The notes under the pieces were generated by a model. That model saw nothing but the letters and a program-made list of their open reading frames with translations, ran no database searches and had not been told where the DNA came from. Positions 3,413-18,841 of a stretch of DNA of 64,000 nt are shown one piece after another; the stretch's first letter is position 1; every line of letters starts with the position of its first letter. The stretch covers positions 1 through 64,000 of IMG/VR virus record IMGVR_UViG_3300035665_000001, one strand, 5' to 3'. A program made the translations under genes and the position numbers.

Positions 3413-5032
3413 CTATTTTAATTTTTCAGCTCTAATTTCTAAAATAGTTTTATATAACACCTCATCGATCTCAACTATAATTTCCTGATTACCTCGTAAA
3501 CATTTACCAATACCAGGTTCTCCAGAGATAATGGGTACATATTTTCTAGCCTCTTTAGCCGTTGATTCGGAATCACCATCCATTTTAATTTTAGTAAGTA
3601 ATTGCTGTTCTAATACATCTCGCCATTCGGTTTGTGGATGTGTACTACCATCAAAATCAATTTTAGATGTTTGTTTTATCAAATCAACCATAATTTTTTT
3701 AATTTTTGGATATAAATCTGATACAGCTCCATTTGTGTAATTTTTAAAATTCAATTCCACATTTGTCATCAATATTGATGCTTCTCTAAAATTTGCAACT
3801 GGTAAATTTGCGTTGATATATAACAGTAATTGTTCCCACCGTCTAGGTGAAGATCTAACCTCAACAGATTTATCATCATAACTTAAATCTTCAGCAGTTA
3901 AATTATCATAGAATGTATTAAACACTTGTGGGTTTAATTTGATACTTGGAAATTCCTTCGATATATTTTTTTCATATTTTTTAAGGAAATAATCAAACCA
4001 TTGTTCTTTATCAGGGGATTTAAATTCCATTTCTACGAAATCATTATTCATAGGAATATCTTCAACACCATCGTCACTCAAATTTGATGCATAAACAATG
4101 AAAACTCCAGGTGGAATTTTATCATTACCAATTTGTCCATTCAAAATATTTCTAAGGATGTTTCTGATTTTCATATTATCATTTCTAAAATATTCATCTA
4201 AAAACAATATACAGTTATATGATTCCCTAACATTTGTGATCAAAGCTTTATTGTTTGTATAACCATCTCTAATTGTTCTATCTTTTTTAAGATTAGTAAT
4301 CAGTTCTTCCGTAGTCAATTTTAAAGATTTCATCGATTTTAATTTGGTGACCAAATTTGATTCCGATTGTACGATTTCAAATTTTTGTGAGGTCAAATCA
4401 TTTAAACCACTACTATCTTGTGATGTAGTAACGACTGCAGAATCAGAGGAAATTTTATCACCAACCATAATCATAAATGGAATATTGATAATGTGTTCCT
4501 CAGTAATATGTGGTGCCTCAATAGTTATTAATGGTAAACCTAATAATTTTGAGAACCCACGAATAAAAGAAGTTTTACCCGTTCCTGGATCACCAGTAAG
4601 CATAATAGAATTTTTTACACCCGATGAAGCTGCCTGTCCGTCCATTAACGACAATAATGTAAAAATTTGTTTATTGAACACGTTGTTATTATTTACATTT
4701 GGAGCTTTAAACATCAGTTCCTTAGAACTTAATGCTTTATCAAGTGAACCACCAGCTTTCACCGAACCACCAGATTCATCGGGAATATATTTTTCAACAA
4801 CACTACCATCCAAATTTAAAAATTTTGCAGATTTTGCCGCCTCTACATATTTTTTCAAAGATGCAGTTTTTGTATCTAAATCTTTTTCAAAATCACCAAT
4901 ATTTTCATCTGTAATTTTTTTATCTTTGTGGTTTAACACAGCATTAATCAGAGCATCAAATGTTACATTTGTTCTAGATGTAATCTTATCGGAAAGTTTT
5001 GCTTCCGTAATTAACGAATATGATAATTTCAT
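3413..5032 (-). CDS. N-terminal half of split tandem AAA+ ATPase: complete AAA module 1, Walker A of module 2, and N-intein
   Basis: GDPGTGKTS, LFLDEYFR and RSSPRRWE, then a second P-loop ISGEPGIGK followed directly by CLRGNQEI... and a stop 29 aa later. Confidence 0.9.
   Translation of the reverse strand: MKLSYSLITEAKLSDKITSRTNVTFDALINAVLNHKDKKITDENIGDFEKDLDTKTASLKKYVEAAKSAKFLNLDGSVVEKYIPDESGGSVKAGGSLDKALSSKELMFKAPNVNNNNVFNKQIFTLLSLMDGQAASSGVKNSIMLTGDPGTGKTSFIRGFSKLLGLPLITIEAPHITEEHIINIPFMIMVGDKISSDSAVVTTSQDSSGLNDLTSQKFEIVQSESNLVTKLKSMKSLKLTTEELITNLKKDRTIRDGYTNNKALITNVRESYNCILFLDEYFRNDNMKIRNILRNILNGQIGNDKIPPGVFIVYASNLSDDGVEDIPMNNDFVEMEFKSPDKEQWFDYFLKKYEKNISKEFPSIKLNPQVFNTFYDNLTAEDLSYDDKSVEVRSSPRRWEQLLLYINANLPVANFREASILMTNVELNFKNYTNGAVSDLYPKIKKIMVDLIKQTSKIDFDGSTHPQTEWRDVLEQQLLTKIKMDGDSESTAKEARKYVPIISGEPGIGKCLRGNQEIIVEIDEVLYKTILEIRAEKLK
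3416..3502 (-). mobile_element. Split intein, N-fragment (29 aa)
   Basis: CLRGNQEIIV matches intein block A (C1-L-x-G-x-x-x-I) and sits at the GK|T insertion point of a P-loop. Confidence 0.85.
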
Positions 5033-5035
5033 TCT

Positions 5036-5428
5036 CTACTCCCAATTCATAATTTTTTTAAATTCATCTGGTGTATCTACCAGAGTTTTCATCATTTCAG
5101 CATATCTATAAATATATCCAGTTTCAAGATAATTAACACATGGAATAACATATCTTTTTCCCGTATCTGGATCAACGATACCGCCATACATTCCAATGAT
5201 TATTTGAGTTCTGTCTTTACCTGTTGTATCTATTGTAGCCACAGATGCTCGTACTTTTGCTAAATTTTCTTCAGAAATATCAAATTTTGTATCGGTATTA
5301 CTTTGGTTACTAGTTGCAACTCCATAAGATGTTGCAACATCTTCAAAAATCTTATTTGATATTTTATAAGAAGATTTAGTTTGAATTTTAGTGGAAGTTT
5401 GTTTTAACATATCAGCCAACTTACTCAT
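5036..5428 (-). CDS. Hypothetical protein, first gene of the AAA/peptidase late operon
   Basis: ORF with AGGAG SD and TATAAATA at 5470-5477; 3 nt from the AAA gene. Confidence 0.75.
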   Translation of the reverse strand: MSKLADMLKQTSTKIQTKSSYKISNKIFEDVATSYGVATSNQSNTDTKFDISEENLAKVRASVATIDTTGKDRTQIIIGMYGGIVDPDTGKRYVIPCVNYLETGYIYRYAEMMKTLVDTPDEFKKIMNWE

Positions 5429-5521
5429 TTTAACTCCTTCAATATATTATTTTTAATTATAATTTTCTATATTTATATCTTTTTTTTAAAAAAGCCATCA
5501 CTTATATCACATTAATTATTC

Positions 5522-8500
5522 TTAAACGTTTTTCTCCAAATAGTCCAACCAAAATTGAATAAGAAAGAAGTCATCATATTCGGCAATAGTTTTCGATTCA
5601 ACATACTGAATATAACTACTAATACAGACAATATCATCCTCAGATAAACATCTACCAAATGTTTCTTTCTCTAACGAAACTATATCAGAAATAAAAGTGG
5701 TATACGGTTTATCAGATTCAACTTTTTTAATCTCATAACCATAATGTAGTTCTAACTTTTTGTTAAGTAAAAATAAATCCATATCAATTTCATTATGCCA
5801 TTCATTAGTGGATAAATTTTGTTTTAATCTGTAATAAGTATCAGTCATAACAACACGGGTATCATCTGATAAAATTTGATAATTAACTATCAACTTTATT
5901 TTAAACAATAAGTTACGAAGATTTACAACCAATTTAATTAACATTTGACCATATTTTAATTTTTCATCAACATAACCTGTGACATCAAACAATTTTATCT
6001 CTTTCAATCTATCTTTAAAATGTTTAACATCCAATTGATTATAAGCATACGTAGCCGTCAATATTTCAAAAACAGTTTGTTGATCTTTATACAATTCAAT
6101 AAGCACACTTATATCAACGATATTCTGTTTAAAATCATATGCATGAACATCATTCATATATTCTGAAAAAGTCTTAGTCCCATTCAAATGGTTTTTATAC
6201 GCATTTAAAGTTGGGGTTATATCCATAAGCGGTAATTCAAAATTAATATCAAATGATTTTAATAAATTTTTGTTCAACGATGTTAATGCATACCGCTTAG
6301 ATTTTATATTATCCAACTCATAAAACAAATAGAAATTTTTATTTTCTGCTTCGAGGGTTTTTATTTCTGACATAACCAATTCATAGGATTCAACATCTAA
6401 ACCATCTAATACACCATACAACAAATTTATTCGTTCTAACCTAGTTATCAACATATTAAACATTTCCCGAACATTAGCTTTAAATACTAATGTAGGTACA
6501 GCCAAATTAGTAATCTCGGGTCTAAATTCATCTCGATCATATTGCCCCAATGAGGTATTCACAAAATAGCGAATATCAACATTATAAGTATATTTTCCTA
6601 AACCATTGCCAGATTCTGCACCTGTAACAACAGATGCAACAATATTTTTTATTTCGATAATACAATATCGATTTTTATTATTACGCAAAACCAATTTATC
6701 TCCAATAGTTACATTTATTTTTGTAAATGGAGTAGTATATTGTGCAGCATTATTAATATCATAAACACTTTTAACCGAACTTGGAACTTTCGTCATAAAA
6801 GTTATAAATTTACTGCCCGTTATATCCACAGTAGTATTACCAGATATAGGTACCGACAACCTAAAATCAAACAAAAATTCAGATGCTGGATCGGGATATG
6901 CAAATTTTGGATCAAATATTGTCGTATTATCAAACTCATGTCCCGGAAAACCAACACCATTATATCCAACAAAAACATATCCTAGTCTGTCAGCTAATAA
7001 TGTAGTATCCACTGTAGAAAAAGTAACAGCCCCTTTATCCAACATATCCTTTAACGCACCAGATAGATATAGAGGTCTAGTTACCAAAATTCCACTTTCT
7101 GGGTCAGCATATGTCATTTTTGGTACATCTGGGTTTAATTCTAATGGTGCGTAGTGAACATCTCCCATCTTTACAATTTGCGAATTTTTAGGTCCATCCA
7201 AATTAAAAGTTATATGACGTACAAATGCTTCACCAGTGGAGTAAGTAATTTCACATCTAACATCATATGTTCCAGCATCATAAAATGTATGTGCTACCTC
7301 ATTACCATCAAGAACCAATGTTTCTACAAACCATTTATATACTGCTTGTATTTCATTTCCGATAGCGTCAACAGTAGTTTCCATTTTTGCTTTTAATTCG
7401 ACAGTAAATGGGACATTACCAGTATATGAAATAGAATCGGTGTAATCTACTTTATCGGGAACTATAATATTATTATTGATGATAATATCAGTCCATTGCT
7501 TTCTATGTTTTTCAATCAACATATTTTTTTTATTTTCTAATTTTACAACTTCAACACAATTCTTAAATTTTCCAATAAGTTCCACAAAATTATAAAAATC
7601 ACATTTGATACTTTCATTATAATACTCAATATTACTAATAGTTTCGGTTGATAATTTAACGTTGTATTTAGTGTCCACCGAATACTCAACAATCATTTTT
7701 GTAATTTCTGATAATACCTGACTTTGTGTTAAGATTAACGCAGATATTCTACCTTTTTGACTAAACTTTACAACATTATCTTTATTTTTTAAATAAAATG
7801 GGTGAAGAATTAAAATACTGTGGTCCAATTTCTCATAGTCGTCCGTAACTCTCAAAATATTATGAAACCATCGAATGTAATTTATTCGCATCAACTGATT
7901 ATCAAAATATAATTTTTTTAAATTTTTTTCATTCAATAAAAATGCCTTTTCATTAGGTCTAGTTGAAATTATAAACTCATAAAGTATATCCAACTCGGCA
8001 AACAATTCACTTCTAACAACTTTATAAGTTTCATCATCAAATAAATCTGTTAAAATATCTACCGATTCAGAAAAACCGGTAGAAACTTTATCATGGGTTA
8101 TTTCATCCAAATATAATTTATCGATATTACCAATTTTAGTAAATATAGAATCAACCGAATCACTAAATTTTTCAAGTGCGTATAAAATATTAAAATCAAT
8201 TATATTTTCATTGTAAAAAGCGTTATATTCATTTAAAAATTGAATGTAACTTCCTTTATTATATAAATCGGTCAAAACATATGAAAACGCTTTAATTGGG
8301 GTATATATTTTAGTATCAATATATTCATTAAAACCAAAGAATACATTTTTCTTTGCAATAACTAATATAATTTCAACCTTGCTGACGTGCGATTTAAAAT
8401 CAATCAATTTATTCCGACACGATATTTTATTTTCATCGATACCCAAAAGTATATCATCTAGACGCTTACTTTTCAAATCTTCAAGATCAGCAGTTAATTT

Positions 8501-9952
8501 TTTTAAAAATAAAGTATAATCACGTTCTATCGATTCTGCGTATGTTGGTGGGGACAACTTATATGATGCAGTGAAAAATGTTAACGCTGCAGTTTTTAAC
8601 AATTCCTGAACTTTTACAACCTTTTGAACAAACGTATCAAATTCAAAATTATTAAGATGGTATGTTTCCTGCGTCAACAAATTATTATATCGAACAACCC
8701 CAAATTTATAATCGTTTCGTAAATCATCAATAGTAGAATCACCATAATTATCTATATCCAATTTTGAATATCGAAATATATTTGATGTCATCAAATTATA
8801 ATAATATTCCTTAACACTCAACAAAAACAGTTCAGTTTGATAAAATTCAAATGATAAGGTTACTGATTTGCCTGATTCGGAATATTTTTGGGTATAAACA
8901 ATTGGCTTTTTAACAACTTTAGTCATTTCAATTATATCCGAAACAATCTCCTTTAATGTCATATCAGTAATAATATAATCACAATCAACATTTATTTTAC
9001 CATCTTCAATCAATGTAATGTATGCTGAAAATCTATCAAGCATTTTATTGTATTCCGACTCAGTTTTATAATCAACATACATTTGATGTGATGCAATATC
9101 AGAAATAAATAATTTAACACGATTTGAAATAGATTCAAACGTATTTACTAAATTAGTAAACCTATAAACTCCTGATGAAACTATATTATTTTCATATGAT
9201 AATAAATTGTTTTTTATTTTTTCTACAATATCAAAATATTCGAAATTGGTTTGTTCAGGAGTTATCGCTATTGATTGTGATTTAACTTTATCAAATACGT
9301 CGGTATATTCATAAATTTTATTTTCAATCATTTTTTCGGTTGATACCATACTATGTAACTCAACTTTATTTTTATTGAGATACATAGTGTACAACCCATA
9401 CATATAATTGTAAACATCAGTAATGAACGTGCTCGATACATCGAAAATCTTTTTAGTTGGAACAGTTACTCGAAGAATATCATCAACATCATATGGATTA
9501 TTTGAAAAATAATAATATGGAGCAACTGTGTTATCACTATAAATTCTAGCATGTGTTAATACGTTTTGAATTTCATCAACCTCAACTTTTATCAACGGAG
9601 AGACAACAAGCATTTGTTCAAAACGATATAATGAATTAGTGAATGTTACTTTAGTATGAAGAATCTCTAATTCATATAAGTATGATCTAACTATTGCAGA
9701 TTCGATTTTATATTTTTCAAAAGTTACATTTAATGATTGTAATACTTTATCTATTTCACTATTTAATTCAGCAGTTACATCTATTTGTTTCAATACAAGT
9801 TCCAAATTGAATTTAAGAACATTATATTCATCAACAATTTTTTTATAATGAGTAATTTCAGTAGGTTGATCAATAAATTCATAAGTATTATGTGCTGATA
9901 GATTAAAATCCATAACAGCAACATATAATGAATTAAATTTAGTTCTAAACAT
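5522..9952 (-). CDS. Large helical/coiled-coil protein with a central PKD (Ig-like) domain
   Basis: 1476 aa. YTGNVPFTVEL...YKWF...HTFYDAGTYDVRCEITY fits the PKD pattern (~7200-7430). Confidence 0.7.
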   Translation of the reverse strand: MFRTKFNSLYVAVMDFNLSAHNTYEFIDQPTEITHYKKIVDEYNVLKFNLELVLKQIDVTAELNSEIDKVLQSLNVTFEKYKIESAIVRSYLYELEILHTKVTFTNSLYRFEQMLVVSPLIKVEVDEIQNVLTHARIYSDNTVAPYYYFSNNPYDVDDILRVTVPTKKIFDVSSTFITDVYNYMYGLYTMYLNKNKVELHSMVSTEKMIENKIYEYTDVFDKVKSQSIAITPEQTNFEYFDIVEKIKNNLLSYENNIVSSGVYRFTNLVNTFESISNRVKLFISDIASHQMYVDYKTESEYNKMLDRFSAYITLIEDGKINVDCDYIITDMTLKEIVSDIIEMTKVVKKPIVYTQKYSESGKSVTLSFEFYQTELFLLSVKEYYYNLMTSNIFRYSKLDIDNYGDSTIDDLRNDYKFGVVRYNNLLTQETYHLNNFEFDTFVQKVVKVQELLKTAALTFFTASYKLSPPTYAESIERDYTLFLKKLTADLEDLKSKRLDDILLGIDENKISCRNKLIDFKSHVSKVEIILVIAKKNVFFGFNEYIDTKIYTPIKAFSYVLTDLYNKGSYIQFLNEYNAFYNENIIDFNILYALEKFSDSVDSIFTKIGNIDKLYLDEITHDKVSTGFSESVDILTDLFDDETYKVVRSELFAELDILYEFIISTRPNEKAFLLNEKNLKKLYFDNQLMRINYIRWFHNILRVTDDYEKLDHSILILHPFYLKNKDNVVKFSQKGRISALILTQSQVLSEITKMIVEYSVDTKYNVKLSTETISNIEYYNESIKCDFYNFVELIGKFKNCVEVVKLENKKNMLIEKHRKQWTDIIINNNIIVPDKVDYTDSISYTGNVPFTVELKAKMETTVDAIGNEIQAVYKWFVETLVLDGNEVAHTFYDAGTYDVRCEITYSTGEAFVRHITFNLDGPKNSQIVKMGDVHYAPLELNPDVPKMTYADPESGILVTRPLYLSGALKDMLDKGAVTFSTVDTTLLADRLGYVFVGYNGVGFPGHEFDNTTIFDPKFAYPDPASEFLFDFRLSVPISGNTTVDITGSKFITFMTKVPSSVKSVYDINNAAQYTTPFTKINVTIGDKLVLRNNKNRYCIIEIKNIVASVVTGAESGNGLGKYTYNVDIRYFVNTSLGQYDRDEFRPEITNLAVPTLVFKANVREMFNMLITRLERINLLYGVLDGLDVESYELVMSEIKTLEAENKNFYLFYELDNIKSKRYALTSLNKNLLKSFDINFELPLMDITPTLNAYKNHLNGTKTFSEYMNDVHAYDFKQNIVDISVLIELYKDQQTVFEILTATYAYNQLDVKHFKDRLKEIKLFDVTGYVDEKLKYGQMLIKLVVNLRNLLFKIKLIVNYQILSDDTRVVMTDTYYRLKQNLSTNEWHNEIDMDLFLLNKKLELHYGYEIKKVESDKPYTTFISDIVSLEKETFGRCLSEDDIVCISSYIQYVESKTIAEYDDFFLIQFWLDYLEKNV

Positions 9953-12137
9953 ATTTTTTCTCCATATCTAACCATACCATATCTATTTTTTCCTGTTTTT
10001 TAATAAATTCTGCATTTCTTTTAAATTCCATATTTTTATTATGTGTGAATGCAACTATATTACTAAGTATGTTATTAAATGTTGTTATAACATCATCAAA
10101 ATTTTCCTGTCCACTTGAAATGGTAAATTTATGAGTAATAGTATAATCAAACAAATCAGAAACAACACTAATATCTTGATTTATATCAAACGCTATAGTA
10201 ACAACAGTTTTGAATATATCTTTAACATTTGTGAGTTTATTATCAATATCAAGAATCAAAGTTTCACTATATTGCTTATTCAATATATGACTGTGTATCA
10301 TTCCATATAGTAATTTTGTTTCAATAAGTAAATAGCGATTATACATTTCCAATCTACTAATATCAAATATCTTATCTGTAAATTCTCGATCCCACTCTTT
10401 TACCAAGTGTGTTTGAAGCATTGTCAATAATGATTTATAATACGACAACAACTTATTTCTATCATCTACCGAATACCATTCAACATCACATTCGTAATCT
10501 ACAAATTCCTGAAAATGAGTGTTTAATGTACCAACAAAATTTCCACGCAGTAAATTCACATATCCCATATCAGTAGAAGCATCAGGAATATATTTTTTAA
10601 AGAATGGTAATCGATTATCAAAATAATCCTTATACCGCAAAATATATGCAGTGATAGTATCATCCAAATCAATGATGGAGGCGGTTAACTTATTCAACTC
10701 AATTTCTAGAACCTTATTATCAATTTCATGTGCTTCCTTTAGTGTCATCAATTCATTATATTTTTTATCCAAATCATTTTTTTCATTGGTATAAAAATTT
10801 ATTTTTGCCAATACAGCACTGTTATCAACATTTGCATTGATGAAATTTTTATCAATTTCATTTATCGCTACATTTAATTGTCTATTAAGTTCAACACCTA
10901 ACTTGGAATAAATTTCAAATTCAGCAACTTTCTCCCAATAAGTTTCAGTTGCATATTTTTTAGCTACTATATCATACGTTTGCTGTAATTCATCTAACAT
11001 CGTATCAAAGGCATCAACTATATGTTGATCGATTTTACCTAAATGCAGATTAGTGTAAAGGTATTTTAATTTCTCTAAGGTTATCTCTCTATACTTAAAA
11101 TATTTTTTCTCATCATCGCTAGTTACTACCAGAAGCAACACTTTTTTCTTATCGATAATAAGTTGATCAACCTCAGCAATGTATTTTTTTAGTTCATCTA
11201 CTTTTTTACTGGTCATTTTAAATAAAAATTCATTATTATTAAAAGTTTTATGTGATTGTAACCATAATAATGAATACTCTTTTACTGCTAACTCAATCGA
11301 AAAATTGTATTTCTTTGTTAATGTTTCATACCATTTATCAACTAATAAATCATAGACCTGGGTTGATGAAGTTTCTTCTAAAGTTTTTTTACCAAACATA
11401 ATACTTGAACCGTATGTCCAGTATGTTTCATATTCATCTTTAAACTCTTCAACTAAATCCTGATAAAATACCTCCGTTCTTTTTTCCCATTCCTCATACA
11501 GCATTCGCAAAGTAACAGAAAAAAATGTATGTGGTAATAATTCAGTTTTTATTTTAGATAACTCAACAACATGATCTTGAATATTCTTCTCATAATGAAC
11601 AAAATCATCAGTCACTTTTACCATAATATCGTGTAATGTATTGATTTCTTGTGTAGTATCAATAACATAATTGTCATTATAAAAATAATTGTTTTCAACC
11701 ACCTGTGATTGATAATACCTAATAAAATCGGTTATTTTTTGAATATCATCAGTTAAAATACTCAAATTATGACTAATAAACTCATTATCATCCATAGACA
11801 ATTTACGTTTCAATATAATTTTTTCTTTGTTTGAAACCAACGAATTTTTATTAATGATTAGTTCATTATACTGTTGTAGTATTGGTAGCCCATAAGTATC
11901 AAAATCAATGATAAATTTTGACAAATCATACAATGTCGTATGGAGCTCACTGTCTAAACGTTGTGTAGAATTTTTATGGTCGTTAATCGACATCACAGTT
12001 GCCTCATCCAACCCATAATTTTTAATGAAATCTTCTGATAAATTTTGAAAATAACTGTCTATTTTTGAGTTATATGGATACCCACTTATAAATTCAAGAT
12101 TTTGTCGTACATCAATTCTAACCATTGTATTCCCCAA
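9945..12137 (-). CDS. Hypothetical coiled-coil protein
   Basis: 730-aa ORF overlapping the start of the next gene; heptad-rich with no recognised motif. Confidence 0.75.
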   Translation of the reverse strand: MGNTMVRIDVRQNLEFISGYPYNSKIDSYFQNLSEDFIKNYGLDEATVMSINDHKNSTQRLDSELHTTLYDLSKFIIDFDTYGLPILQQYNELIINKNSLVSNKEKIILKRKLSMDDNEFISHNLSILTDDIQKITDFIRYYQSQVVENNYFYNDNYVIDTTQEINTLHDIMVKVTDDFVHYEKNIQDHVVELSKIKTELLPHTFFSVTLRMLYEEWEKRTEVFYQDLVEEFKDEYETYWTYGSSIMFGKKTLEETSSTQVYDLLVDKWYETLTKKYNFSIELAVKEYSLLWLQSHKTFNNNEFLFKMTSKKVDELKKYIAEVDQLIIDKKKVLLLVVTSDDEKKYFKYREITLEKLKYLYTNLHLGKIDQHIVDAFDTMLDELQQTYDIVAKKYATETYWEKVAEFEIYSKLGVELNRQLNVAINEIDKNFINANVDNSAVLAKINFYTNEKNDLDKKYNELMTLKEAHEIDNKVLEIELNKLTASIIDLDDTITAYILRYKDYFDNRLPFFKKYIPDASTDMGYVNLLRGNFVGTLNTHFQEFVDYECDVEWYSVDDRNKLLSYYKSLLTMLQTHLVKEWDREFTDKIFDISRLEMYNRYLLIETKLLYGMIHSHILNKQYSETLILDIDNKLTNVKDIFKTVVTIAFDINQDISVVSDLFDYTITHKFTISSGQENFDDVITTFNNILSNIVAFTHNKNMEFKRNAEFIKKQEKIDMVWLDMEKKYV

Positions 12138-13482: not shown

Positions 13483-14307
13483 TTATAAAACATTTTCTAG
13501 ATCTGGTCTTTCCTCTGCAGTGGGTAGAGTGATGTTCAATACAACATATAATACACCATCACTCAAACCCTTCTTAACACGCATTTTTTGACCATGTTTT
13601 GTATTTTGTGGAACTTTAATTTTGAAAACATCACCAAAAAAATTAATTTCTTTTTGCCCACCAAAAATTGCAGTTTTTAAATCAATAGTTTCCATAATAA
13701 AAATATCATTATTTTCAATAGTCATATTGTTTGGTGGTGTTATTTTAATAGTGATGTAAACATTACCAACGCGACCATTCATACTTCTTCCTTTACCTGA
13801 AACCCGCATTTTTGTACCATTCTTGATTCCAGCTGGAATAGTCAATTTTATATTTTCACCATTGATTTCAGTCGTAATATAATCACCATTAACTGCTGTT
13901 TCTAATGGGATAGCAACATCAACATGTATATCTAAATTGGCCTGTGGTCTAGGTGTTTCAAATGGTGAACCGCCACCAAAACTAAATGAACTACCACCAG
14001 CTCCACCACCAAACATATTTCTAAGCATTTCATCAATATCCATACCAGATGATCTATGATATTGATGAAAACCTTGTCCAGTGCCCTTGTTAAACATAGA
14101 ATCGCCACGCATATCATACTGAGATTTTTTCTCAGCATTGCCTAACACTTCATATGCGGCAGCAATTTCTTTAAATTTTTCCTCAGCATCTGGACTTTTA
14201 TTTCTATCGGGGTGATACTTATTCGCTAATTTTCTATAAGATTTTTTTATTTCATCAGCACTTGCATTTTCACTAACACCGAGAATACTATATAAACTTT
14301 TAGCCAT
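13483..14307 (-). CDS. cbpA: J-domain co-chaperone, CbpA/type II DnaJ
   Basis: J domain with HPD (KYHPDRN), G/F-rich linker, DnaJ C-terminal domain, no zinc finger. Confidence 0.9.
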
Positions 14308-14309
14308 AA

Positions 14310-14786
14310 TTATTTTCCTTGAATAATAACCATTGCAGCACGTAATAATCTGCCGTTTAAAATGTAACCTTTTCTAAGTACCTCTACGATTGAATTATCA
14401 TCCAACCCATTATCAACTTTCGCAATTGCTTCATGAAAATTAGGATCAAATTTTTCAGTATTAATTTCCTCAACACCATGTTTTTTCAAAGTATTAAGTA
14501 AACCCTTATAAAGTAATCCAACACCAACCCTAACATCATCTGGCATATCAACTTTCAATGAATTCTCAAAATTGTCCAAGGTTTCGAGCAAATCTTTTGA
14601 AAATCGTTCATTAGAAAATCTAACAGCATCTTCTTTTTCACGTTGTAATCGATTTTTAAAATTTTGAGAATCGGATAGTGCTCGATAATATTTGTCTTTA
14701 TATTCATTTACTTCATTGGTTAACTTTTCAAAAGTTTCGGGTGTATTTTCTAATACATCATCTTCATTCATCATATTTGTTCTCAC
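14310..14786 (-). CDS. grpE: Nucleotide exchange factor GrpE
   Basis: FDPNFHEAI...[18 protein letters not shown] GrpE signature; lies between dnaK and the J protein. Confidence 0.95.
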
Positions 14787-14797
14787 AGTTTGAAATT

Positions 14798-14821
14798 GGG
14801 GACAAAACTTAATTTGTCCCC
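14798..14821 (-). terminator. Stem-loop between dnaK and grpE (attenuator or stabiliser)
   Basis: GGGGACAAA-N6-TTTGTCCCC inverted repeat with a weak U tail. Confidence 0.5.
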
Positions 14822-14834
14822 ATAAAATTAAAAT

Positions 14835-16124
14835 TTAGTGTTCAATTTCCGCCTCAAGAAAATCATCATCTGGCATAGATGCTGAATAGGTTTGATTATC
14901 CTGATTTTGCGATGCCTCATGCAACTTCGTACCAATTTCCTGGAACTTATTCATCAAAGTTTCATGAATTTTTTTAAGATCGGAAACAGTTGATGTTTCG
15001 TTACCTACCAATTCCTTTGCAGAATCAATAACAGATTTTAATTCGGCTGTATCTAAGGCTTCATTTTCCTTAATAAACTTTTCTGCCTGATTAATCGTAC
15101 CATCAATTGAGTTTGTAATACTAATTTTTTCAAGCTTATCTTTATTTCGAATGTTTGATTCCTCCGCATCTGCAACCATTTTAGAAATTTCATCATCAGT
15201 TAACGTACCACTACCAGTAATAGTGATTGAATTAGCTTTCCCCGTAGATAAATCTTTTGCAGAAACAGAAAGAATACCATTGGTATCAATATCCATCTTA
15301 ATTTCAATTTGAGGAACACCTCGTGGTGCAGGAGCAATTCCACCCAATTCAAATGTTCCTAACTGCTTATTATCAGAAAATAACTGTGCCTCTCCAGTAG
15401 CAATCATGACAGATACCGCAGGTTGGTTATCAGCCGCCGTTGAAAACACCTGTTTTGCAGATGTAGGAATAGTTGTACCTTTTTCAACCAGTTTAGTCAT
15501 CACACCACCCATAGTTTCAATTCCTAAAGATAATGGTGTGACGTCCAATAAAACAATATCATCAACATCACCTGCTAATACACCTCCTTGAATAGCAGCA
15601 CCTGCAGCAACCACTTCATCGGGGTTGACAGTATTATTCAAGATTTTACCATTAAAAAACTCAGAAACTTTTGTTTTTACTAATGGAATACGAGTTGAAC
15701 CACCAACCATTACAACTTCCTGGATTTTTGATTTATCTAACCCAGCCTGTTTCAAAGCATCTTTGATATGGGTGAGAATTTCATCAACCATTGGTTCAAT
15801 CATAGAATCTAATTTAGCTCTAGTCACTTTCGAAATCAAATGTTTTGGACCTGAAGCATCAGCAGTAATGTATGGTAAATTAATTTCAGTTTCCATAGTT
15901 GCAGAAAGTTCTTTTTTTGCTTTTTCAGCAGAATCCATTAAACGTTGCATAGCAAGTGCATCATTAGATAAATCCATACCAGTATCAGATTTAAATTGAG
16001 AAATTAAGTATCCCATAATCGCCTGGTCTACGTCCTTACCACCCATAAAAGCATTACCATCGGTTGATAAAACTTCAAATGTTCCTTCTTCACCAACATC
16101 AATAACTGAAATATCTAATGTTCC
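14835..16124 (-). CDS. dnaK: DnaK (Hsp70), exon 2
   Basis: GTLDISV...VVMVGGSTRIP...NPDEVVAAGAAIQG...LLDVTPLSLGIET...PAPRGVPQIE. 429 aa after the splice junction. Confidence 0.95.
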   Translation of the reverse strand, partial: GTLDISVIDVGEEGTFEVLSTDGNAFMGGKDVDQAIMGYLISQFKSDTGMDLSNDALAMQRLMDSAEKAKKELSATMETEINLPYITADASGPKHLISKVTRAKLDSMIEPMVDEILTHIKDALKQAGLDKSKIQEVVMVGGSTRIPLVKTKVSEFFNGKILNNTVNPDEVVAAGAAIQGGVLAGDVDDIVLLDVTPLSLGIETMGGVMTKLVEKGTTIPTSAKQVFSTAADNQPAVSVMIATGEAQLFSDNKQLGTFELGGIAPAPRGVPQIEIKMDIDTNGILSVSAKDLSTGKANSITITGSGTLTDDEISKMVADAEESNIRNKDKLEKISITNSIDGTINQAEKFIKENEALDTAELKSVIDSAKELVGNETSTVSDLKKIHETLMNKFQEIGTKLHEASQNQDNQTYSASMPDDDFLEAEIEH

Positions 16125-16457
16125 CGATTTGTTATCGTAGGGGAATTTAACCCCCACTTCTAATAGTTTCCTATTAGTCCAGACTATATCTTAGTTTGTT
16201 AATTTTCAAACCTTCCGCACTCTTGGAGTTTTACCTTCTTCAGCATTATCTGGTCAGAATCCATACTCTAGTCGTTGAACCTTGAACTTATTTCTAAGTC
16301 CCTTGGCTGCTGATTTTCCAATCTTAACCCTTTTCAAACCATTATCCCTATCTTCACAGATTTGATTGTGGTGTGTTAAGCTCTAAGGACGTCCCAGCAA
16401 TTCACGGAATTTTTTTAAACTGGAGGCTTGTTATGCTGCTACTGCAGCCAATAGTTC
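16125..16457 (-). ncRNA. Group I self-splicing intron (333 nt, no ORF) in dnaK
   Basis: Exon ends in U (GGT GGT|) and intron ends in G (..AAATCG|GGA ACA). Core elements in order: GAATTGCTGGGA (P), AATCAGCAGCC (Q), GTTCAACGACTAGA (R), AAGATATAGTCT (S). Removal restores DFGG-GTLD. Confidence 0.92.
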
Positions 16458-17048
16458 ACCACCAAAATCCACAACACAAATGGTTTCATCTTTTTTCTTA
16501 TCAATACCATACGCTAATGCTGCTGCAGTAGGTTCGTTAATAATACGTAACACATTAAGACCGGCAATTTTACCAGCATCCTGTGTTGCTTTACGTTGTG
16601 AATCATTAAAGTAAGCAGGAACAGTAATAACTGCATCAGTAACAGTTGTACCTAAATATGCCTCAGCATCCACTTTTAATTTTGAAAGAATCTTAGCAGA
16701 AATCTCTTGAGGCGTGTAAGTCTTACCATCAATCTCAACAGCGGCAGCACCATTTCTATCTACAATGTTGTATTGTACTTTAGTTTTTGCTTCCTCAGTT
16801 TTTTTCTCATTACTCATTAAACCCATAATACGTTTAACAGCTTCAATTGTTTTATGGGGGTTTGTTACTGCCTGACGTTTTGCAGACTCACCAACCAAAA
16901 CTTCATCACCTGCAAAAGCCACAATTGATGGAGTAGTATTATTACCCTCACGATTTGGGATAATTTTTGACGTTCCATTTTCATAAATGGAAATACAACT
17001 ATTAGTGGTTCCTAAATCTAAACCAAGCACAATTTGTTTTTTACTCAT
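16458..17048 (-). CDS. dnaK: DnaK (Hsp70), exon 1
   Basis: [54 protein letters not shown]. 197 aa; spliced product 626 aa. Confidence 0.95.
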
Positions 17049-17074
17049 AATATTTTCCTCATTAAGCTAAATTA

Positions 17075-17872
17075 TTAATTAATGTATTTTTTTTCAATAA
17101 TTGGTTTGAAAAATTGTATCCAACTTTCTCTATTCCAATTGGTTTTCGAATGACAGCTATTACATAACACTATCAAATTTTTTTCATCTGAGTTTTGTTT
17201 ATTATAATCTATATGATGAATGTGTAGTTTTGATGTAATTTCAAAACGGTTACACAGTTGGCATTGTAAATTATCACGAACCTTTATCAGATATTTCTTT
17301 TGCTTATTAAAGCCTACATCGTATTCACCAAAACTTAAACCACCTTGCCAATTATGATGATATTGTAGTTTTGGTGTATTCTGGTTTTGTTTTAAAAACC
17401 CAGTATCATCATAAGATCTTTTACCTTTCCTTGAATCAGAAGCCCATTGCTTATATTCATCGGTATGTTCTTTACCAAAAAAAGGATTTTTTTCACCAAT
17501 TCTCGGATTATCTTTCAAATACATTTTCAATGAATTTGAAATTTTACTCGATACCATAGGATCACATGATGGATTGTTTTTTCCAGAAAAACGGTCTGAC
17601 ATAGTTTTTCTTAATTCAGCAGCTCTATCACGTCCAATTCGATCTTCCCAACTGATTGTTTTTTGCCAATTAATTTGACATTTTTTAGAACAATATCGCC
17701 TTTTTTCAGATCCAACCCTTAATAATCCTTTTCGTGGTCCAGTTTTAACAATTTTTAATTGTATCACCACACCACAAAATTCACAGTTTTTAATATCAAA
17801 TAATTTATGGTCCATATAACATTTCCTAAAATGTATATTACTATACATTATTTTAATGAACATATGATCCAT
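17075..17872 (-). CDS. Free-standing HNH homing endonuclease with NUMOD3-like DNA-binding motifs
   Basis: GEKNPFFGKEHT (NUMOD3-like); CQLC...LHIHHIDYNKQNSDEKNLIVLCNSCHSKT (HNH). Confidence 0.85.
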   Translation of the reverse strand: MDHMFIKIMYSNIHFRKCYMDHKLFDIKNCEFCGVVIQLKIVKTGPRKGLLRVGSEKRRYCSKKCQINWQKTISWEDRIGRDRAAELRKTMSDRFSGKNNPSCDPMVSSKISNSLKMYLKDNPRIGEKNPFFGKEHTDEYKQWASDSRKGKRSYDDTGFLKQNQNTPKLQYHHNWQGGLSFGEYDVGFNKQKKYLIKVRDNLQCQLCNRFEITSKLHIHHIDYNKQNSDEKNLIVLCNSCHSKTNWNRESWIQFFKPIIEKKYIN

Positions 17873-17897
17873 TTATACCACTGTTTTTAATATCCAG

Positions 17898-18395
17898 TTA
17901 AATAAAATTTTCGGGATATTTGTCAATAACATCGGATACTATGTTATACGGCAATATTTCACCAAATCGCAACTGTATTGATCGATATTCCAAAATATCA
18001 AAAAAATCGTTATACTTGATAAAATTATTAGTTAAGTATATGGCAATTAATAAATTTTTATTTGAATATTTACCTTTTAAAAAATGAAAATCATCATTCC
18101 TGGATCGAATAACATCAACTACTGAATAGTAAATAATTGATAATTCTTCTGGAAACTGTTTAGGTCCTCCAAATCTATCCTTTAACAATATATCACTTTC
18201 AATATCATAAATTACATCCGAACGCATAGTTAAATTGCGATTTGATAATTTTGTTTCACGCACATTTGGTTTATAAACTTTAAAAATAAGATAATCGCCA
18301 AATTTTATATTTGGAATATCACCATAGTCAAATGTATCACCAAATTGCTGTCTTACAGCAAAAATTGCCAATGACATTGATAATCCTCTCTTCAA
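17898..18395 (-). CDS. Hypothetical protein
   Basis: ORF track; start uncertain; ends KYPENFI. Confidence 0.65.
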   Translation of the reverse strand: MKRGLSMSLAIFAVRQQFGDTFDYGDIPNIKFGDYLIFKVYKPNVRETKLSNRNLTMRSDVIYDIESDILLKDRFGGPKQFPEELSIIYYSVVDVIRSRNDDFHFLKGKYSNKNLLIAIYLTNNFIKYNDFFDILEYRSIQLRFGEILPYNIVSDVIDKYPENFI

Positions 18396-18415
18396 AAAAA
18401 AATTATACCAAAATT

Positions 18416-18835
18416 TTATTTAATTGGAATGTAATGAATCTCTTTTTCTTTTATAGTTGGAGTTACAACAACTCTTAATATACCATCAATAATTTCTGCA
18501 TCAATTTTATCAACTGGAAACATTAAACTATAGGCAACATCAAAATTTCTTTTTGCAATATCACGTTTGATATATTCTCGACCATCATCAATATTTTCAT
18601 CGGATTTTGAACCCATAATTCGCAATGAATCTTCGGACAATTCAATTTTGATATCTTCTTTTGAAAACCCAGCAACTGCAATTTCTAAATGGGCAATGCC
18701 ATCTTTAGTATAAACGTCGGTCAATGGATATTTACTGACTGCTTTAGTATTAGTAAACACCTGTCCAAAAAACTCATTGACAGCATCTTCTAAAACAGCA
18801 TTAGCGGGGTAAAAATGTATATTTCTTGTTCTCAT
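18416..18835 (-). CDS. Small heat-shock protein (Hsp20/IbpA-like)
   Basis: YPLTDV...LEIAVAGFSKEDIKIEL...YIKRDIAKRNF...AEIIDGILRV alpha-crystallin domain; ATG 18835 is 7 nt after AGGAG. Confidence 0.92.
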   Translation of the reverse strand: MRTRNIHFYPANAVLEDAVNEFFGQVFTNTKAVSKYPLTDVYTKDGIAHLEIAVAGFSKEDIKIELSEDSLRIMGSKSDENIDDGREYIKRDIAKRNFDVAYSLMFPVDKIDAEIIDGILRVVVTPTIKEKEIHYIPIK

Positions 18836-18841
18836 AATCAA

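What the first reader, a model, noticed from the sequence alone, without database searches (positions are those of the whole stretch)
16125..16457. Group I intron inside dnaK, in the DxGGGT phosphate-2 loop
Seen: a 333-nt insertion with P, Q, R and S core elements, exon-terminal U and intron-terminal G. A candidate internal guide GCCUCCAG pairs with exon UUGGUGGU giving the U.G pair at the splice site. An in-frame TAA blocks read-through. Excision restores DFGG-GTLD and a 626-aa DnaK. Known: phage group I introns are mostly in DNA-metabolism, terminase, lysin, structural or psbA genes; I do not recall one in an Hsp70 gene. Inference: chaperone output depends on ribozyme folding, which could make it condition-dependent.
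Basis: partly seen in the sequence, partly recalled or inferred. Interest (0 to 1): 0.85.

Follow-up and report, generated by a model that had tools for sequence, protein, structure and literature searches.

The report
Group I intron splitting phage dnaK
A 333-base self-splicing-type (group I) intron interrupts the Hsp70/DnaK chaperone gene of a 306-kb phage at its most conserved ATP-binding loop; it is the endonuclease-less copy of a mobile intron family that occupies the same spot in other large phages and in contigs labelled as giant viruses, so it is real and a new host gene for phage introns, but an ordinary kind of element.

Summary
Window 16457..16125 is a 333-nt insertion between dnaK codons 197 and 198 (DFGG|GTLD). 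Rfam's group I model scores 63.8 bits (threshold 50) on a 601-nt sub-window. Both whole-window scans missed it because of the speed filters. The two exon pieces map to Pfam HSP70 positions 1-195 and 196-597, and 79 of 79 other phage dnaK loci are uninterrupted at exactly this junction. Across nine homologous introns, 95% of cells pair in the P3-P9.1 structure (36-45% in slid controls), and 37 of 59 pairs show compensatory changes. The closest relative phage (L305) has the same intron at the same site, 94.5% identical over nt 1-255 although the exons are only 66-74% identical, with a GIY-YIG endonuclease gene in P8. The window's copy is therefore the ORF-less form. Homologous introns occupy the same site in Lak-B megaphages and in contigs labelled giant-virus MAGs. 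An HSP70 group I intron is already published for Megavirus and Moumouvirus. Verdict: a genuine group I intron, a new member of a known kind. Condition-dependent chaperone output is untested.

The parts
16458..17048 (-). dnaK exon 1 (197 codons, ends ...DFGG; the last 8 nt UUGGUGGU, 16465..16458, form the 5' strand of P1)
   Evidence: Pfam HSP70 profile 1-195, E 1e-83; sequence
16125..16457 (-). Group I intron, 333 nt, no ORF; first base G (16457), terminal guanosine at 16125
   Evidence: RF00028 63.8 bits vs GA 50; 79/79 homologs uninterrupted here; covariation
14835..16124 (-). dnaK exon 2 (429 codons plus stop; begins GTLDISV)
   Evidence: Pfam HSP70 profile 196-597, E 2e-129
16431..16433 (-). 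In-frame TAA (intron nt 25-27) that ends translation of unspliced RNA, 3 nt upstream of the guide sequence; conserved at the same position in L305
16435..16448 (-). Hairpin inside the P1 loop (intron nt 10-23, GCUGC-AGUA-GCAGC); kept in L305 with a C-to-U wobble change; absent from L295 and L149
16420..16427 (-). Internal guide sequence GCCUCCAG (intron nt 31-38), 3' strand of P1; G31 makes the G.U pair with the exon-terminal U
   Evidence: sequence; the same GCCUCC guide in L305, L295, L149, L129, L189; covaries in Lak-B
16403..16409 (-). P3 5' strand (nt 49-55); pairs with 16213..16219 (nt 239-245)
   Evidence: 58/61 cells paired, 4 pairs with compensatory change
16308..16399 (-). P4 (nt 59-64 / 145-150) enclosing the P5-P5a-P5b extension (nt 65-144)
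   Evidence: Rfam alignment; P4 52/54, P5 23/23, P5a 49/54 cells paired
16279..16307 (-). P6/P6a (nt 151-179) with a GAAA loop
   Evidence: P6a 58/63 cells paired, 6 of 7 pairs compensatory
16269..16273 (-). P7 5' strand GACUA (nt 185-189), expected guanosine-binding helix; pairs with 16182..16186 (UAGUC, nt 272-276)
   Evidence: invariant in all 9 introns, 45/45 paired; motif hits unique in the window
16226..16268 (-). P7.1/P7.2-type insertion between P7 and P3' (nt 190-232); outer helix 190-193/229-232
   Evidence: 26/26 cells paired, 3 of 4 pairs compensatory
16194..16211 (-). P8 (nt 247-264) with an 8-nt loop; in L305 the same stem encloses a 289-codon GIY-YIG endonuclease ORF
16137..16177 (-). 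P9 (nt 281-298, GAAA loop) and P9.1 (nt 301-321)
   Evidence: P9 60/63 and P9.1 58/63 cells paired; all 7 P9.1 pairs compensatory
17075..17872 (-). Free-standing HNH/NUMOD3 endonuclease gene 26 nt upstream of dnaK; neighbour, probably an independent selfish element
   Evidence: Pfam HNH and NUMOD3; homologs always directly upstream of dnaK

Best explanation
The stretch 16457..16125 (minus strand) is a group I intron, of the P7.1/P7.2-bearing type common in phages, inserted at phase 0 between the Gly197 and Gly198 codons of a phage dnaK gene. Shown: a canonical core (P3-P9.1) supported by covariation; an exon-terminal U and an intron-terminal G; a precise insertion relative to intron-less homologs; and intact exons that together form an uninterrupted Hsp70. 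Inferred mechanism: in the pre-mRNA the guide GCCUCCAG pairs with exon UUGGUGGU to form P1. Free guanosine bound at P7 attacks after U16458. The terminal G16125 then enters the same site, and the exon-1 3'-OH attacks the 3' splice site, joining GGUGGU to GGAACA. The spliced mRNA then encodes the 626-aa DnaK. Ribosomes on unspliced RNA stop at the TAA at nt 25-27, just upstream of the guide, which leaves the ribozyme core free to fold. Origin: this copy has no endonuclease gene. It is the ORF-less form of a mobile intron whose full form, in the related phage contig L305, carries a GIY-YIG homing endonuclease in the P8 loop. The window's copy probably spread by endonuclease-driven homing into the conserved GGTGGT|GG site and later lost the ORF. 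Alternatively it is mobilised only in trans. Its main effect is that of a selfish element that splices out and so leaves the host gene working.
For: RF00028 scores 63.8 bits (GA 50), E 7e-16, full-length. Pfam HSP70 profile positions 1-195 and 196-597 are split exactly at the insertion. Gap 0 at this junction in 79/79 other phage dnaK loci. Intron DNA is similar to known Bacillus and Staphylococcus phage group I introns. In nine homologous introns, 490/515 cells pair (95%) against 36-45% for slid partners, and 37/59 pairs show compensatory double changes (seven-intron version). L305 has the same site, nt 1-255 are 94.5% identical while exons are 74%/66% identical, the TAA and guide are conserved, and a GIY-YIG ORF sits in P8. 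Same-site homologs with endonuclease ORFs occur in L295, L129, L143, L189 and Lak-B1. The published precedent is an HSP70 intron in Megavirus and Moumouvirus, the latter without an ORF (PMC3542560).
Against: There is no RNA evidence. The exact spliced-junction 30-mer was not found in the metagenome collection. P1 has a U.U mismatch at -4 and is not significant on its own. No P10 pairing with exon 2 is evident, whereas L295, L189, L152 and Lak-B have 5-7 bp. The P1 loop is unusually long (30 nt). Default and permissive whole-window Rfam scans did not report it. The unconstrained MFE fold does not reproduce the core, which is usual for group I introns.
Confidence: 0.88

Rival explanations
1. Regulatory intron: splicing efficiency depends on temperature, translation rate or host growth state, so the phage's DnaK supply is tuned by ribozyme folding.
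For: DnaK synthesis necessarily requires splicing. The in-frame stop lies 3 nt before the guide sequence and is conserved in L305, an arrangement that would couple translation to P1 formation. From my own knowledge, not checked here, splicing of the T4 introns in vivo has been reported to depend on translation and growth state. The weak P1 (U.U mismatch) and missing P10 could make splicing sensitive to conditions.
Against: No direct evidence. The pattern fits a selfish element better. The intron is absent from 79/79 other phage dnaK genes. Sister copies carry homing endonucleases. Related introns sit at other conserved Hsp70 sites. The intron is far more conserved than its exons, 94.5% against 66-74%, which is typical of recent horizontal spread.
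Confidence: 0.12
2. Collaborative homing: the free-standing HNH endonuclease directly upstream of dnaK cuts intron-less dnaK alleles at or near the insertion site. The ORF-less intron would then both protect its own genome and be copied during repair, as proposed for cyanophage psbA and F-CphI.
For: HNH and intron co-occur in the window and in L305 (62% identical HNH). All close HNH homologs lie immediately upstream of a dnaK gene. The closest intron-less relative L005 lacks both elements.
Against: L198/LR756504 and L199 carry the HNH next to uninterrupted dnaK genes. L199's site is the canonical GGAGGT|GGAAC sequence, so the enzyme would cut its own genome if that were its target. L305's intron has its own GIY-YIG endonuclease, which is sufficient for homing.
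Confidence: 0.1
3. Dead intron or split pseudogene: the ribozyme no longer splices, and dnaK is expressed only as fragments (205 aa, plus a 440-aa ORF that starts at a GTG inside P9.1) or not at all.
For: No endonuclease ORF, no P10, a mismatch in P1 and an expanded P1 loop. No spliced junction found. A 440-aa ORF from GTG at 16157 exists mechanically.
Against: Every core helix is intact. The P7 and J8/7 strings are identical to those of homologs. Both exons are open and strongly Hsp70-like with no frameshift. The gene sits in an intact hsp20-dnaK-grpE-dnaJ block. The same P1 mismatch is present in HEG-bearing copies L305, L295 and L149.
Confidence: 0.05

Closest known systems
Group I intron in the HSP70 gene of Megavirus chilensis and Acanthamoeba polyphaga moumouvirus (Yoosuf et al. 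2012, PMC3542560)
   Same: A group I intron interrupting a viral Hsp70 gene. It occurs with an endonuclease ORF (Megavirus) or without one (Moumouvirus), matching the L305/L295 versus window situation. IMG/VR contigs labelled as giant-virus MAGs carry homologous introns at exactly the window's site.
   Different: The host there is a eukaryotic giant virus. Here it is a tailed phage (T4-like gp15, gp5 and sheath genes) with a bacterial-type dnaK-grpE-dnaJ set. I could not retrieve the Megavirus sequence, so identity of the insertion site and homology of the intron are not tested.
Phage group I introns of the T4 td/nrdB/sunY and Bacillus phage SPO1/Bastille (I-BasI) type
   Same: The same ribozyme class by sequence: blastn hits of 66-77% to Bacillus and Staphylococcus phage introns, some overlapping I-BasI or HNH annotations. 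Shared features are a P7.1/P7.2-type insertion, an ORF site in a peripheral loop, insertion in a highly conserved codon stretch, and an early in-frame stop.
   Different: The host gene is a chaperone rather than a DNA-metabolism, terminase, lysin or structural gene. This copy has no ORF, lacks P2, and has a hairpin inside the P1 loop.
Cyanophage S-PM2 psbA intron with the adjacent free-standing endonuclease F-CphI (recalled from memory, not read here)
   Same: An ORF-less group I intron in a phage auxiliary gene with a free-standing endonuclease gene next to the interrupted gene.
   Different: HNH homologs here also sit beside uninterrupted dnaK genes with a canonical site, so targeting of the insertion site is unlikely. 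A sister intron has its own GIY-YIG enzyme.
Group I introns of Jug jumbo gut phages (PMC12880540)
   Same: Large phage genomes in which group I introns and stand-alone HNH, GIY-YIG and PD-(D/E)xK endonucleases fragment essential genes. About half of the predicted introns there were confirmed by metatranscriptome reads.
   Different: The reported host genes are terL, nrdD and DNA polymerase. dnaK is not mentioned.

Membership tests
Group I intron (Rfam RF00028) | Covariance-model score at or above the curated gathering score | tested here: met
   63.8 bits vs 50, E 7e-16, model 1-253 of 253. Only seen when a 601-nt stretch is searched; whole-window scans miss it.
Group I intron (Rfam RF00028) | Conserved catalytic core helices P3-P4-P5-P6-P7-P8-P9 maintained by base pairing | tested here: met
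   Across nine homologs, 490/515 cells pair against 36-45% for slid controls, and 37/59 pairs have compensatory changes. P7 and J8/7 are invariant.
Group I intron (Rfam RF00028) | 5' splice site after a U that forms a G.U wobble with an internal guide sequence (P1) | tested here: met
   U16458 pairs with G31 of GCCUCCAG, 7 of 8 pairs. Not significant alone. The guide is conserved in L305, L295, L149, L129 and L189 and changes compensatorily in Lak-B at -3 and -7.
Group I intron (Rfam RF00028) | Intron-terminal guanosine at the 3' splice site | tested here: met
   G16125. All ten homologous introns examined (nine distinct sequences) also end in G.
Group I intron (Rfam RF00028) | P10 pairing between the guide region and the 3' exon (common, not obligatory) | tested here: not met
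   The bases 5' of the guide (AUAACAA) do not pair with GGAACA. L295, L189, L152 and Lak-B have 5-7 bp.
Group I intron (Rfam RF00028) | Guanosine-dependent self-splicing | not testable with these tools
   No RNA data. The spliced-junction search in metagenome contigs found nothing.
Subgroup IA-like phage introns | Extra P7.1/P7.2 element between P7 and the 3' strand of P3 | tested here: inconclusive
   A 43-nt element (nt 190-232) sits there and its closing helix covaries, 26/26 cells and 3 of 4 pairs. No subgroup-specific model was available, so the IA assignment rests on architecture and on similarity to Bacillus phage introns.
Mobile (homing) group I intron | Intron-encoded homing endonuclease | tested here: not met
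   There is no ORF in the 333-nt intron. Sister copy L305 has a 289-aa GIY-YIG ORF in P8. L295, L129, L143, L189 and Lak-B1 have a PD-(D/E)xK-like ORF.
Mobile (homing) group I intron | Patchy distribution with intron-less alleles and an intron more conserved than its exons | tested here: met
   Absent in 79/79 other loci, including the relative L005. Intron identity to L305 is 94.5% against 74%/66% for the exons.
Hsp70/DnaK | Full-length match to the HSP70 profile after removal of the insertion | tested here: met
   Profile 1-195 and 196-597 of 599, E 1e-83 and 2e-129. GrpE and DnaJ genes lie directly downstream.

The most novel reading that the evidence does not exclude
One mobile group I intron lineage, targeted to the GG|GT codons of the Hsp70 phosphate-2 loop, has moved between bacteriophages (this 306-kb phage, its relative L305, Lak megaphages of Prevotella) and giant viruses of eukaryotes. 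Along the way it swapped endonuclease cargo (GIY-YIG versus a Pfam-less PD-(D/E)xK-like family) and, in Lak-B1, adapted that cargo to a TAG-recoded genetic code. Hsp70 would then be a cross-domain hotspot, with at least three intron sites, for homing elements.
Probability: 0.35. Interest if true: 0.6.

Novelty: new member of a known kind. Interest (0 to 1): 0.45.

Why it matters
For annotation: dnaK in this phage, in Lak-B megaphages and in several marine phage contigs is called as two fragments. In addition, standard Rfam scanning of long sequence misses the intron, so phage intron content is probably under-counted. For mobile-element biology: the same few nucleotides of the most conserved Hsp70 loop are occupied by related introns in very different large viruses, with different endonuclease cargo. 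That makes a compact natural system for studying intron homing, cargo exchange and possible phage/giant-virus exchange. For phage biology: it adds a chaperone to the list of phage genes whose expression requires RNA splicing, and a conditional role could be tested by experiment.

Tried and rejected
(1) Rfam on the whole window, gathering and permissive modes, found no group I hit. This is a filter artefact, since the 601-nt search scores 63.8 bits.
(2) Rfam on the Lak and LR756504 dnaK loci found nothing. On the 661-nt Lak-B4 insertion it gave only a 17-bit partial hit. The Lak intron was identified by shared core strings, exact site and a homologous ORF instead.
(3) The unconstrained MFE fold pairs the 5' end with distant regions and was not used for structure.
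(4) P1 significance by shuffling is weak, so I relied on comparative data.
(5) I looked for P10 in the window's intron and found none.
(6) The alternative guide GCUGC (nt 10-14) was rejected: mostly wobble pairs, it competes with the hairpin, and it is not conserved.
(7) The HNH collaborative-homing idea is weakened by L199 and L198.
(8) A search for other introns of this class in the window, using core motifs with mismatches, found none. Other intron classes were not excluded.
(9) The spliced-junction 30-mer had 0 hits in metagenome contigs.
(10) I tried to attach organism names to the PD-(D/E)xK-like endonuclease family and found no names.
(11) I tried to verify that the GVMAG-labelled contigs are giant viruses from flanking genes; this was inconclusive. 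Only L101's eukaryote-type Hsp70 N-terminus and L275's gene content point that way.
(12) Intein, group II intron and frameshift readings were rejected: there is an in-frame stop, no Hint domain, no group II hit, and a clean CM match.
(13) MAFFT on whole introns misaligned the Lak sequences, so I replaced it with an anchor-segmented alignment.

Full report
WHAT IS THERE. The dnaK gene lies on the minus strand. Exon 1 runs 17048..16458 and ends ...GAT TTT GGT GGT. A 333-nt insertion occupies 16457..16125. Exon 2 starts at 16124 with GGA ACA TTA GAT and ends with its stop codon at 14835. Read without splicing, the frame stops at a TAA at intron nt 25-27 (16433..16431; the 205-aa ORF). Pfam's HSP70 profile matches exon 1 over positions 1-195 and exon 2 over positions 196-597, so removing the insertion restores an unbroken 626-aa Hsp70.

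IS IT A GROUP I INTRON? Rfam's default scan of the whole window reports nothing, and neither does the permissive whole-window scan. When only 16000-16600 is searched, RF00028 matches the minus strand at 63.8 bits against a gathering score of 50, with E = 7e-16, over the whole model. The misses are therefore filter failures, probably caused by the long peripheral insertions. The intron DNA also resembles annotated group I introns of Bacillus and Staphylococcus phages at 66-77% identity, some overlapping I-BasI or HNH annotations.

INDEPENDENT EVIDENCE FOR A PRECISE INSERTION. I fetched 80 phage dnaK loci from IMG/VR. One is the window's own contig (IMGVR_UViG_3300035665_000001, 306 kb). In all 79 others the exon-1 and exon-2 matches abut with gap 0 at exactly this junction. 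The commonest site is GAYYTNGGTGGT|GGTACN, and DLGGGTFD occurs in 72 of 79 loci.

STRUCTURE. Numbering the intron from its first base (window coordinate = 16458 minus position), I assign these elements:
- P1: exon UUGGUGGU with guide GCCUCCAG, nt 31-38.
- A hairpin inside the P1 loop, nt 10-23.
- No P2.
- P3: 49-55 / 239-245.
- P4: 59-64 / 145-150.
- A P5-P5a-P5b extension.
- P6/P6a: 151-179, with a GAAA loop.
- P7: 185-189 / 272-276.
- A P7.1/P7.2-type element, nt 190-232.
- P8: 247-264.
- P9: 281-298, with a GAAA loop.
- P9.1: 301-321.
- A 12-nt tail ending in G333.
All assigned pairs are standard, and the nested set without P7 evaluates to -66 kcal/mol. On an anchor-segmented alignment of nine homologous introns, 490 of 515 cells (95%) pair. 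When the 3' partners are slid by 1-3 columns, only 36-45% pair. Of the 59 pairs, 37 show changes on both sides; all seven pairs of P9.1 do, as do six of seven in P6a (seven-intron version). These counts come from few sequences and from a structure derived from the window's own sequence, so they lean towards it. The margin is nevertheless large. P4, P6 and P7 are invariant and so carry no covariation information.

P1 AND P10. The guide pairing has 7 of 8 pairs, with a U.U mismatch at -4. Because the exon end consists only of G and U, a similar match appears in 54% of shuffles of the first 70 nt when wobbles count, and in 11% when at least five Watson-Crick pairs are required. The assignment therefore rests on comparison. 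L305, L295 and L149 have the same GCCUCC guide and the same U.U mismatch. L129 and L189 pair GCCUCC perfectly with exon GGAGGU. Lak-B pairs GCAUCCG with exon CGGUUGU, with compensatory changes at -3 and -7. I found no P10 in the window's intron, whereas L295, L189, L152 and Lak-B have 5-7 bp.

RELATIVES AND ORIGIN. A pattern built from two conserved core strings found more than 112 viral contigs. Eleven of them have Hsp70 exons around the intron.
- Same site, D-x-G-G|G-T: L129, L143/L117, L152, L189 and L295. All have an exon-terminal T and an intron-terminal G.
- Lak-B1 and Lak-B4 megaphages (MK250020, MK250023) have 1501-nt and 584-nt introns at the same site. Lak-A1 is uninterrupted (GGTTGT|GGTACA), which fixes the junction.
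- The closest relative is metagenome contig L305. Its DnaK is 77%/67% identical to the window's and it has the same hsp20-HNH-dnaK-grpE-dnaJ-orf730 order. It carries the same intron at the same site, 94.5% identical over nt 1-255 and 83% over the last 85 nt, while exon nucleotide identity is only 74% and 66%. It keeps the P1-loop hairpin, the TAA at nt 25-27 and the P8 stem.
- The P8 loop of L305 holds a 289-codon ORF that Pfam assigns to GIY-YIG / SegE-like endonucleases. That ORF is 46% identical to the ORF in L149's intron (E = 2e-77).
The window's 333-nt intron is therefore the ORF-less form of a homing intron. An intron much better conserved than its exons is the usual signature of recent horizontal spread. 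The slightly higher exon identity next to the intron (90% and 83% in the first ten codons) cannot be separated from protein-level conservation.

A WIDER FAMILY.
- L295, L129, L143 and L189 carry a different 350-390-aa ORF in P8, with zinc-ribbon motifs and a D...E-x-K motif but no Pfam match.
- The Lak-B1 intron ORF is open only if TAG is read as sense (8 TAGs). It is homologous to those ORFs (E = 3e-23), with a TAG aligned to Gln.
- This endonuclease family has 213 clusters in the large protein database, all unnamed. One member lies between 219-aa and 430-aa HSP70 fragments on a 275-kb contig.
- L149, L181, L191 and L280 carry the window-type ribozyme (74% identity) at a second site about 29 codons downstream (LGG|EDFD), again after GGTGGT. 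L149's contig looks like a marine T4-like myophage, with heme oxygenase, bilin reductase, Hsp20 and T4 RNA ligase.
- L101 has a third site, DLG|TT, in a eukaryote-type Hsp70.

LITERATURE. Yoosuf et al. 2012 (PMC3542560) state that Megavirus and Moumouvirus share a group I intron in the HSP70 gene and that Moumouvirus lacks the intron ORF. I found no paper describing an intron in a phage dnaK. The Lak paper reports only tRNA introns. The Jug phage paper reports thousands of group I introns in jumbo phages, in terL, nrdD and polymerase genes. A 2025 intron database paper mentions neither dnaK nor Hsp70. The library searched is incomplete.

THE NEIGHBOURING HNH GENE. The ORF 17872..17075 (HNH plus NUMOD3) lies 26 nt upstream of dnaK. 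Close homologs (47-62% identity) exist only in L003/L198, L199 and L305, each directly upstream of a dnaK gene. The intron-less relative L005 lacks it. It looks like a free-standing homing endonuclease associated with dnaK. L198 and L199 have it beside uninterrupted dnaK genes, and L199's site is canonical, so it probably does not cut the intron insertion site. I rate collaborative homing at about 0.1.

MECHANISM AND FUNCTION. Shown: anatomy, homology, precise insertion and covariation. Inferred: two-step guanosine-initiated self-splicing that joins GGUGGU to GGAACA; termination of ribosomes at the early TAA on unspliced RNA; and origin by homing followed by ORF loss. The distribution fits a selfish element better.

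VERDICT. This is a genuine group I intron and a new member of a known kind. It gives phage introns a new host gene, but viruses at large already have a precedent in Mimiviridae. The most interesting extension is that related introns hold the same Hsp70 site in tailed phages and in contigs labelled as giant viruses. I could not verify that label, nor compare with the published Megavirus intron.

Noticed in passing
L001 2374-3874 (-) = Prevotella phage Lak-B1 MK250020; L002 2374-2957 (-) = Lak-B4 MK250023: Lak-B megaphage dnaK genes carry a group I intron at the same DxG(G/C)|GT site, 1501 nt in B1 and 584 nt in B4. The B1 copy holds a 367-codon endonuclease-like ORF with 8 in-frame TAG codons, one aligned to Gln in homologs. 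Lak-A1 is intron-less. The Lak paper mentions only tRNA introns.
   Followed up: yes
window 17075-17872 (-); L003 4092-4841 (-); L198, L199 and L305 just upstream of dnaK: A free-standing HNH/NUMOD3 endonuclease gene sits immediately upstream of dnaK in four or five otherwise diverged large-phage contigs (L003 and L198 may be the same phage). It occurs with or without the intron and is absent from the intron-less relative L005. It is probably a separate dnaK-associated homing element; its target is unknown.
   Followed up: partly
L149 about 5090-6237 (-); also L181, L191, L280: A second Hsp70 intron site (…LGG|EDFD, again after GGTGGT) is occupied by the window-type ribozyme carrying a GIY-YIG ORF. 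The contigs look like marine T4-like myophages, and one is 372 kb.
   Followed up: partly
L101 about 7340-7620 (-): A third Hsp70 intron site lies in the phosphate-1 loop (GIDLG|TTYSCVG) of a eukaryote-type Hsp70 on a contig labelled as a giant-virus MAG. A neighbouring ORF (9786-11351) has a homing-endonuclease-associated Hint (intein) domain.
   Followed up: partly
window 16000-16600 versus whole window: Rfam cmscan finds the intron only when a short stretch is submitted. Both whole-window modes miss a match that scores 63.8 bits. Long-sequence scans with default filters can therefore under-count group I introns that have long peripheral insertions.
   Followed up: yes
L143 3864-5000 (+), L295 1620-2783 (-), L129, L189; P0001-P0120; L275 6001-7107: The intron-encoded 350-390-aa endonuclease-like family (zinc ribbons plus a D...E-x-K motif) has no Pfam domain and no informative name, yet has 213 clusters in metagenomes. 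Where checked, it sits between two HSP70 gene fragments.
   Followed up: partly
window 13483-18841 (-) and 3413-5032 (-): The phage encodes a contiguous chaperone set, hsp20 - ORF165 - HNH - dnaK - grpE - dnaJ, plus an AAA ATPase nearby. The relative L005 has hsp20 and dnaK but gave no grpE or dnaJ match between dnaK and the orf730 homolog.
   Followed up: partly
window 16457-16450 vs 16123-16116: The first 8 nt of the intron (GAACUAUU) resemble exon 2 from its second base (GAACAUUA). This may be chance or a trace of the insertion event. L305 shares the intron start.
   Followed up: no
window 55749-63407 (+) and 5522-9952 (-): Two very long ORFs (2552 aa and 1476 aa). The 1476-aa one has no Pfam match; the 2552-aa one was not examined.
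   Followed up: no
L300-L302 (uncultured Bacilli MAG contigs CANRPF010000037, CANQPA010000004, CANRPF010000031): The 21-nt P3-J3/4-P4 string of this intron lineage occurs exactly in three contigs of Bacilli MAGs, not next to dnaK. These are presumably related introns in prophage or bacterial genes.
   Followed up: no
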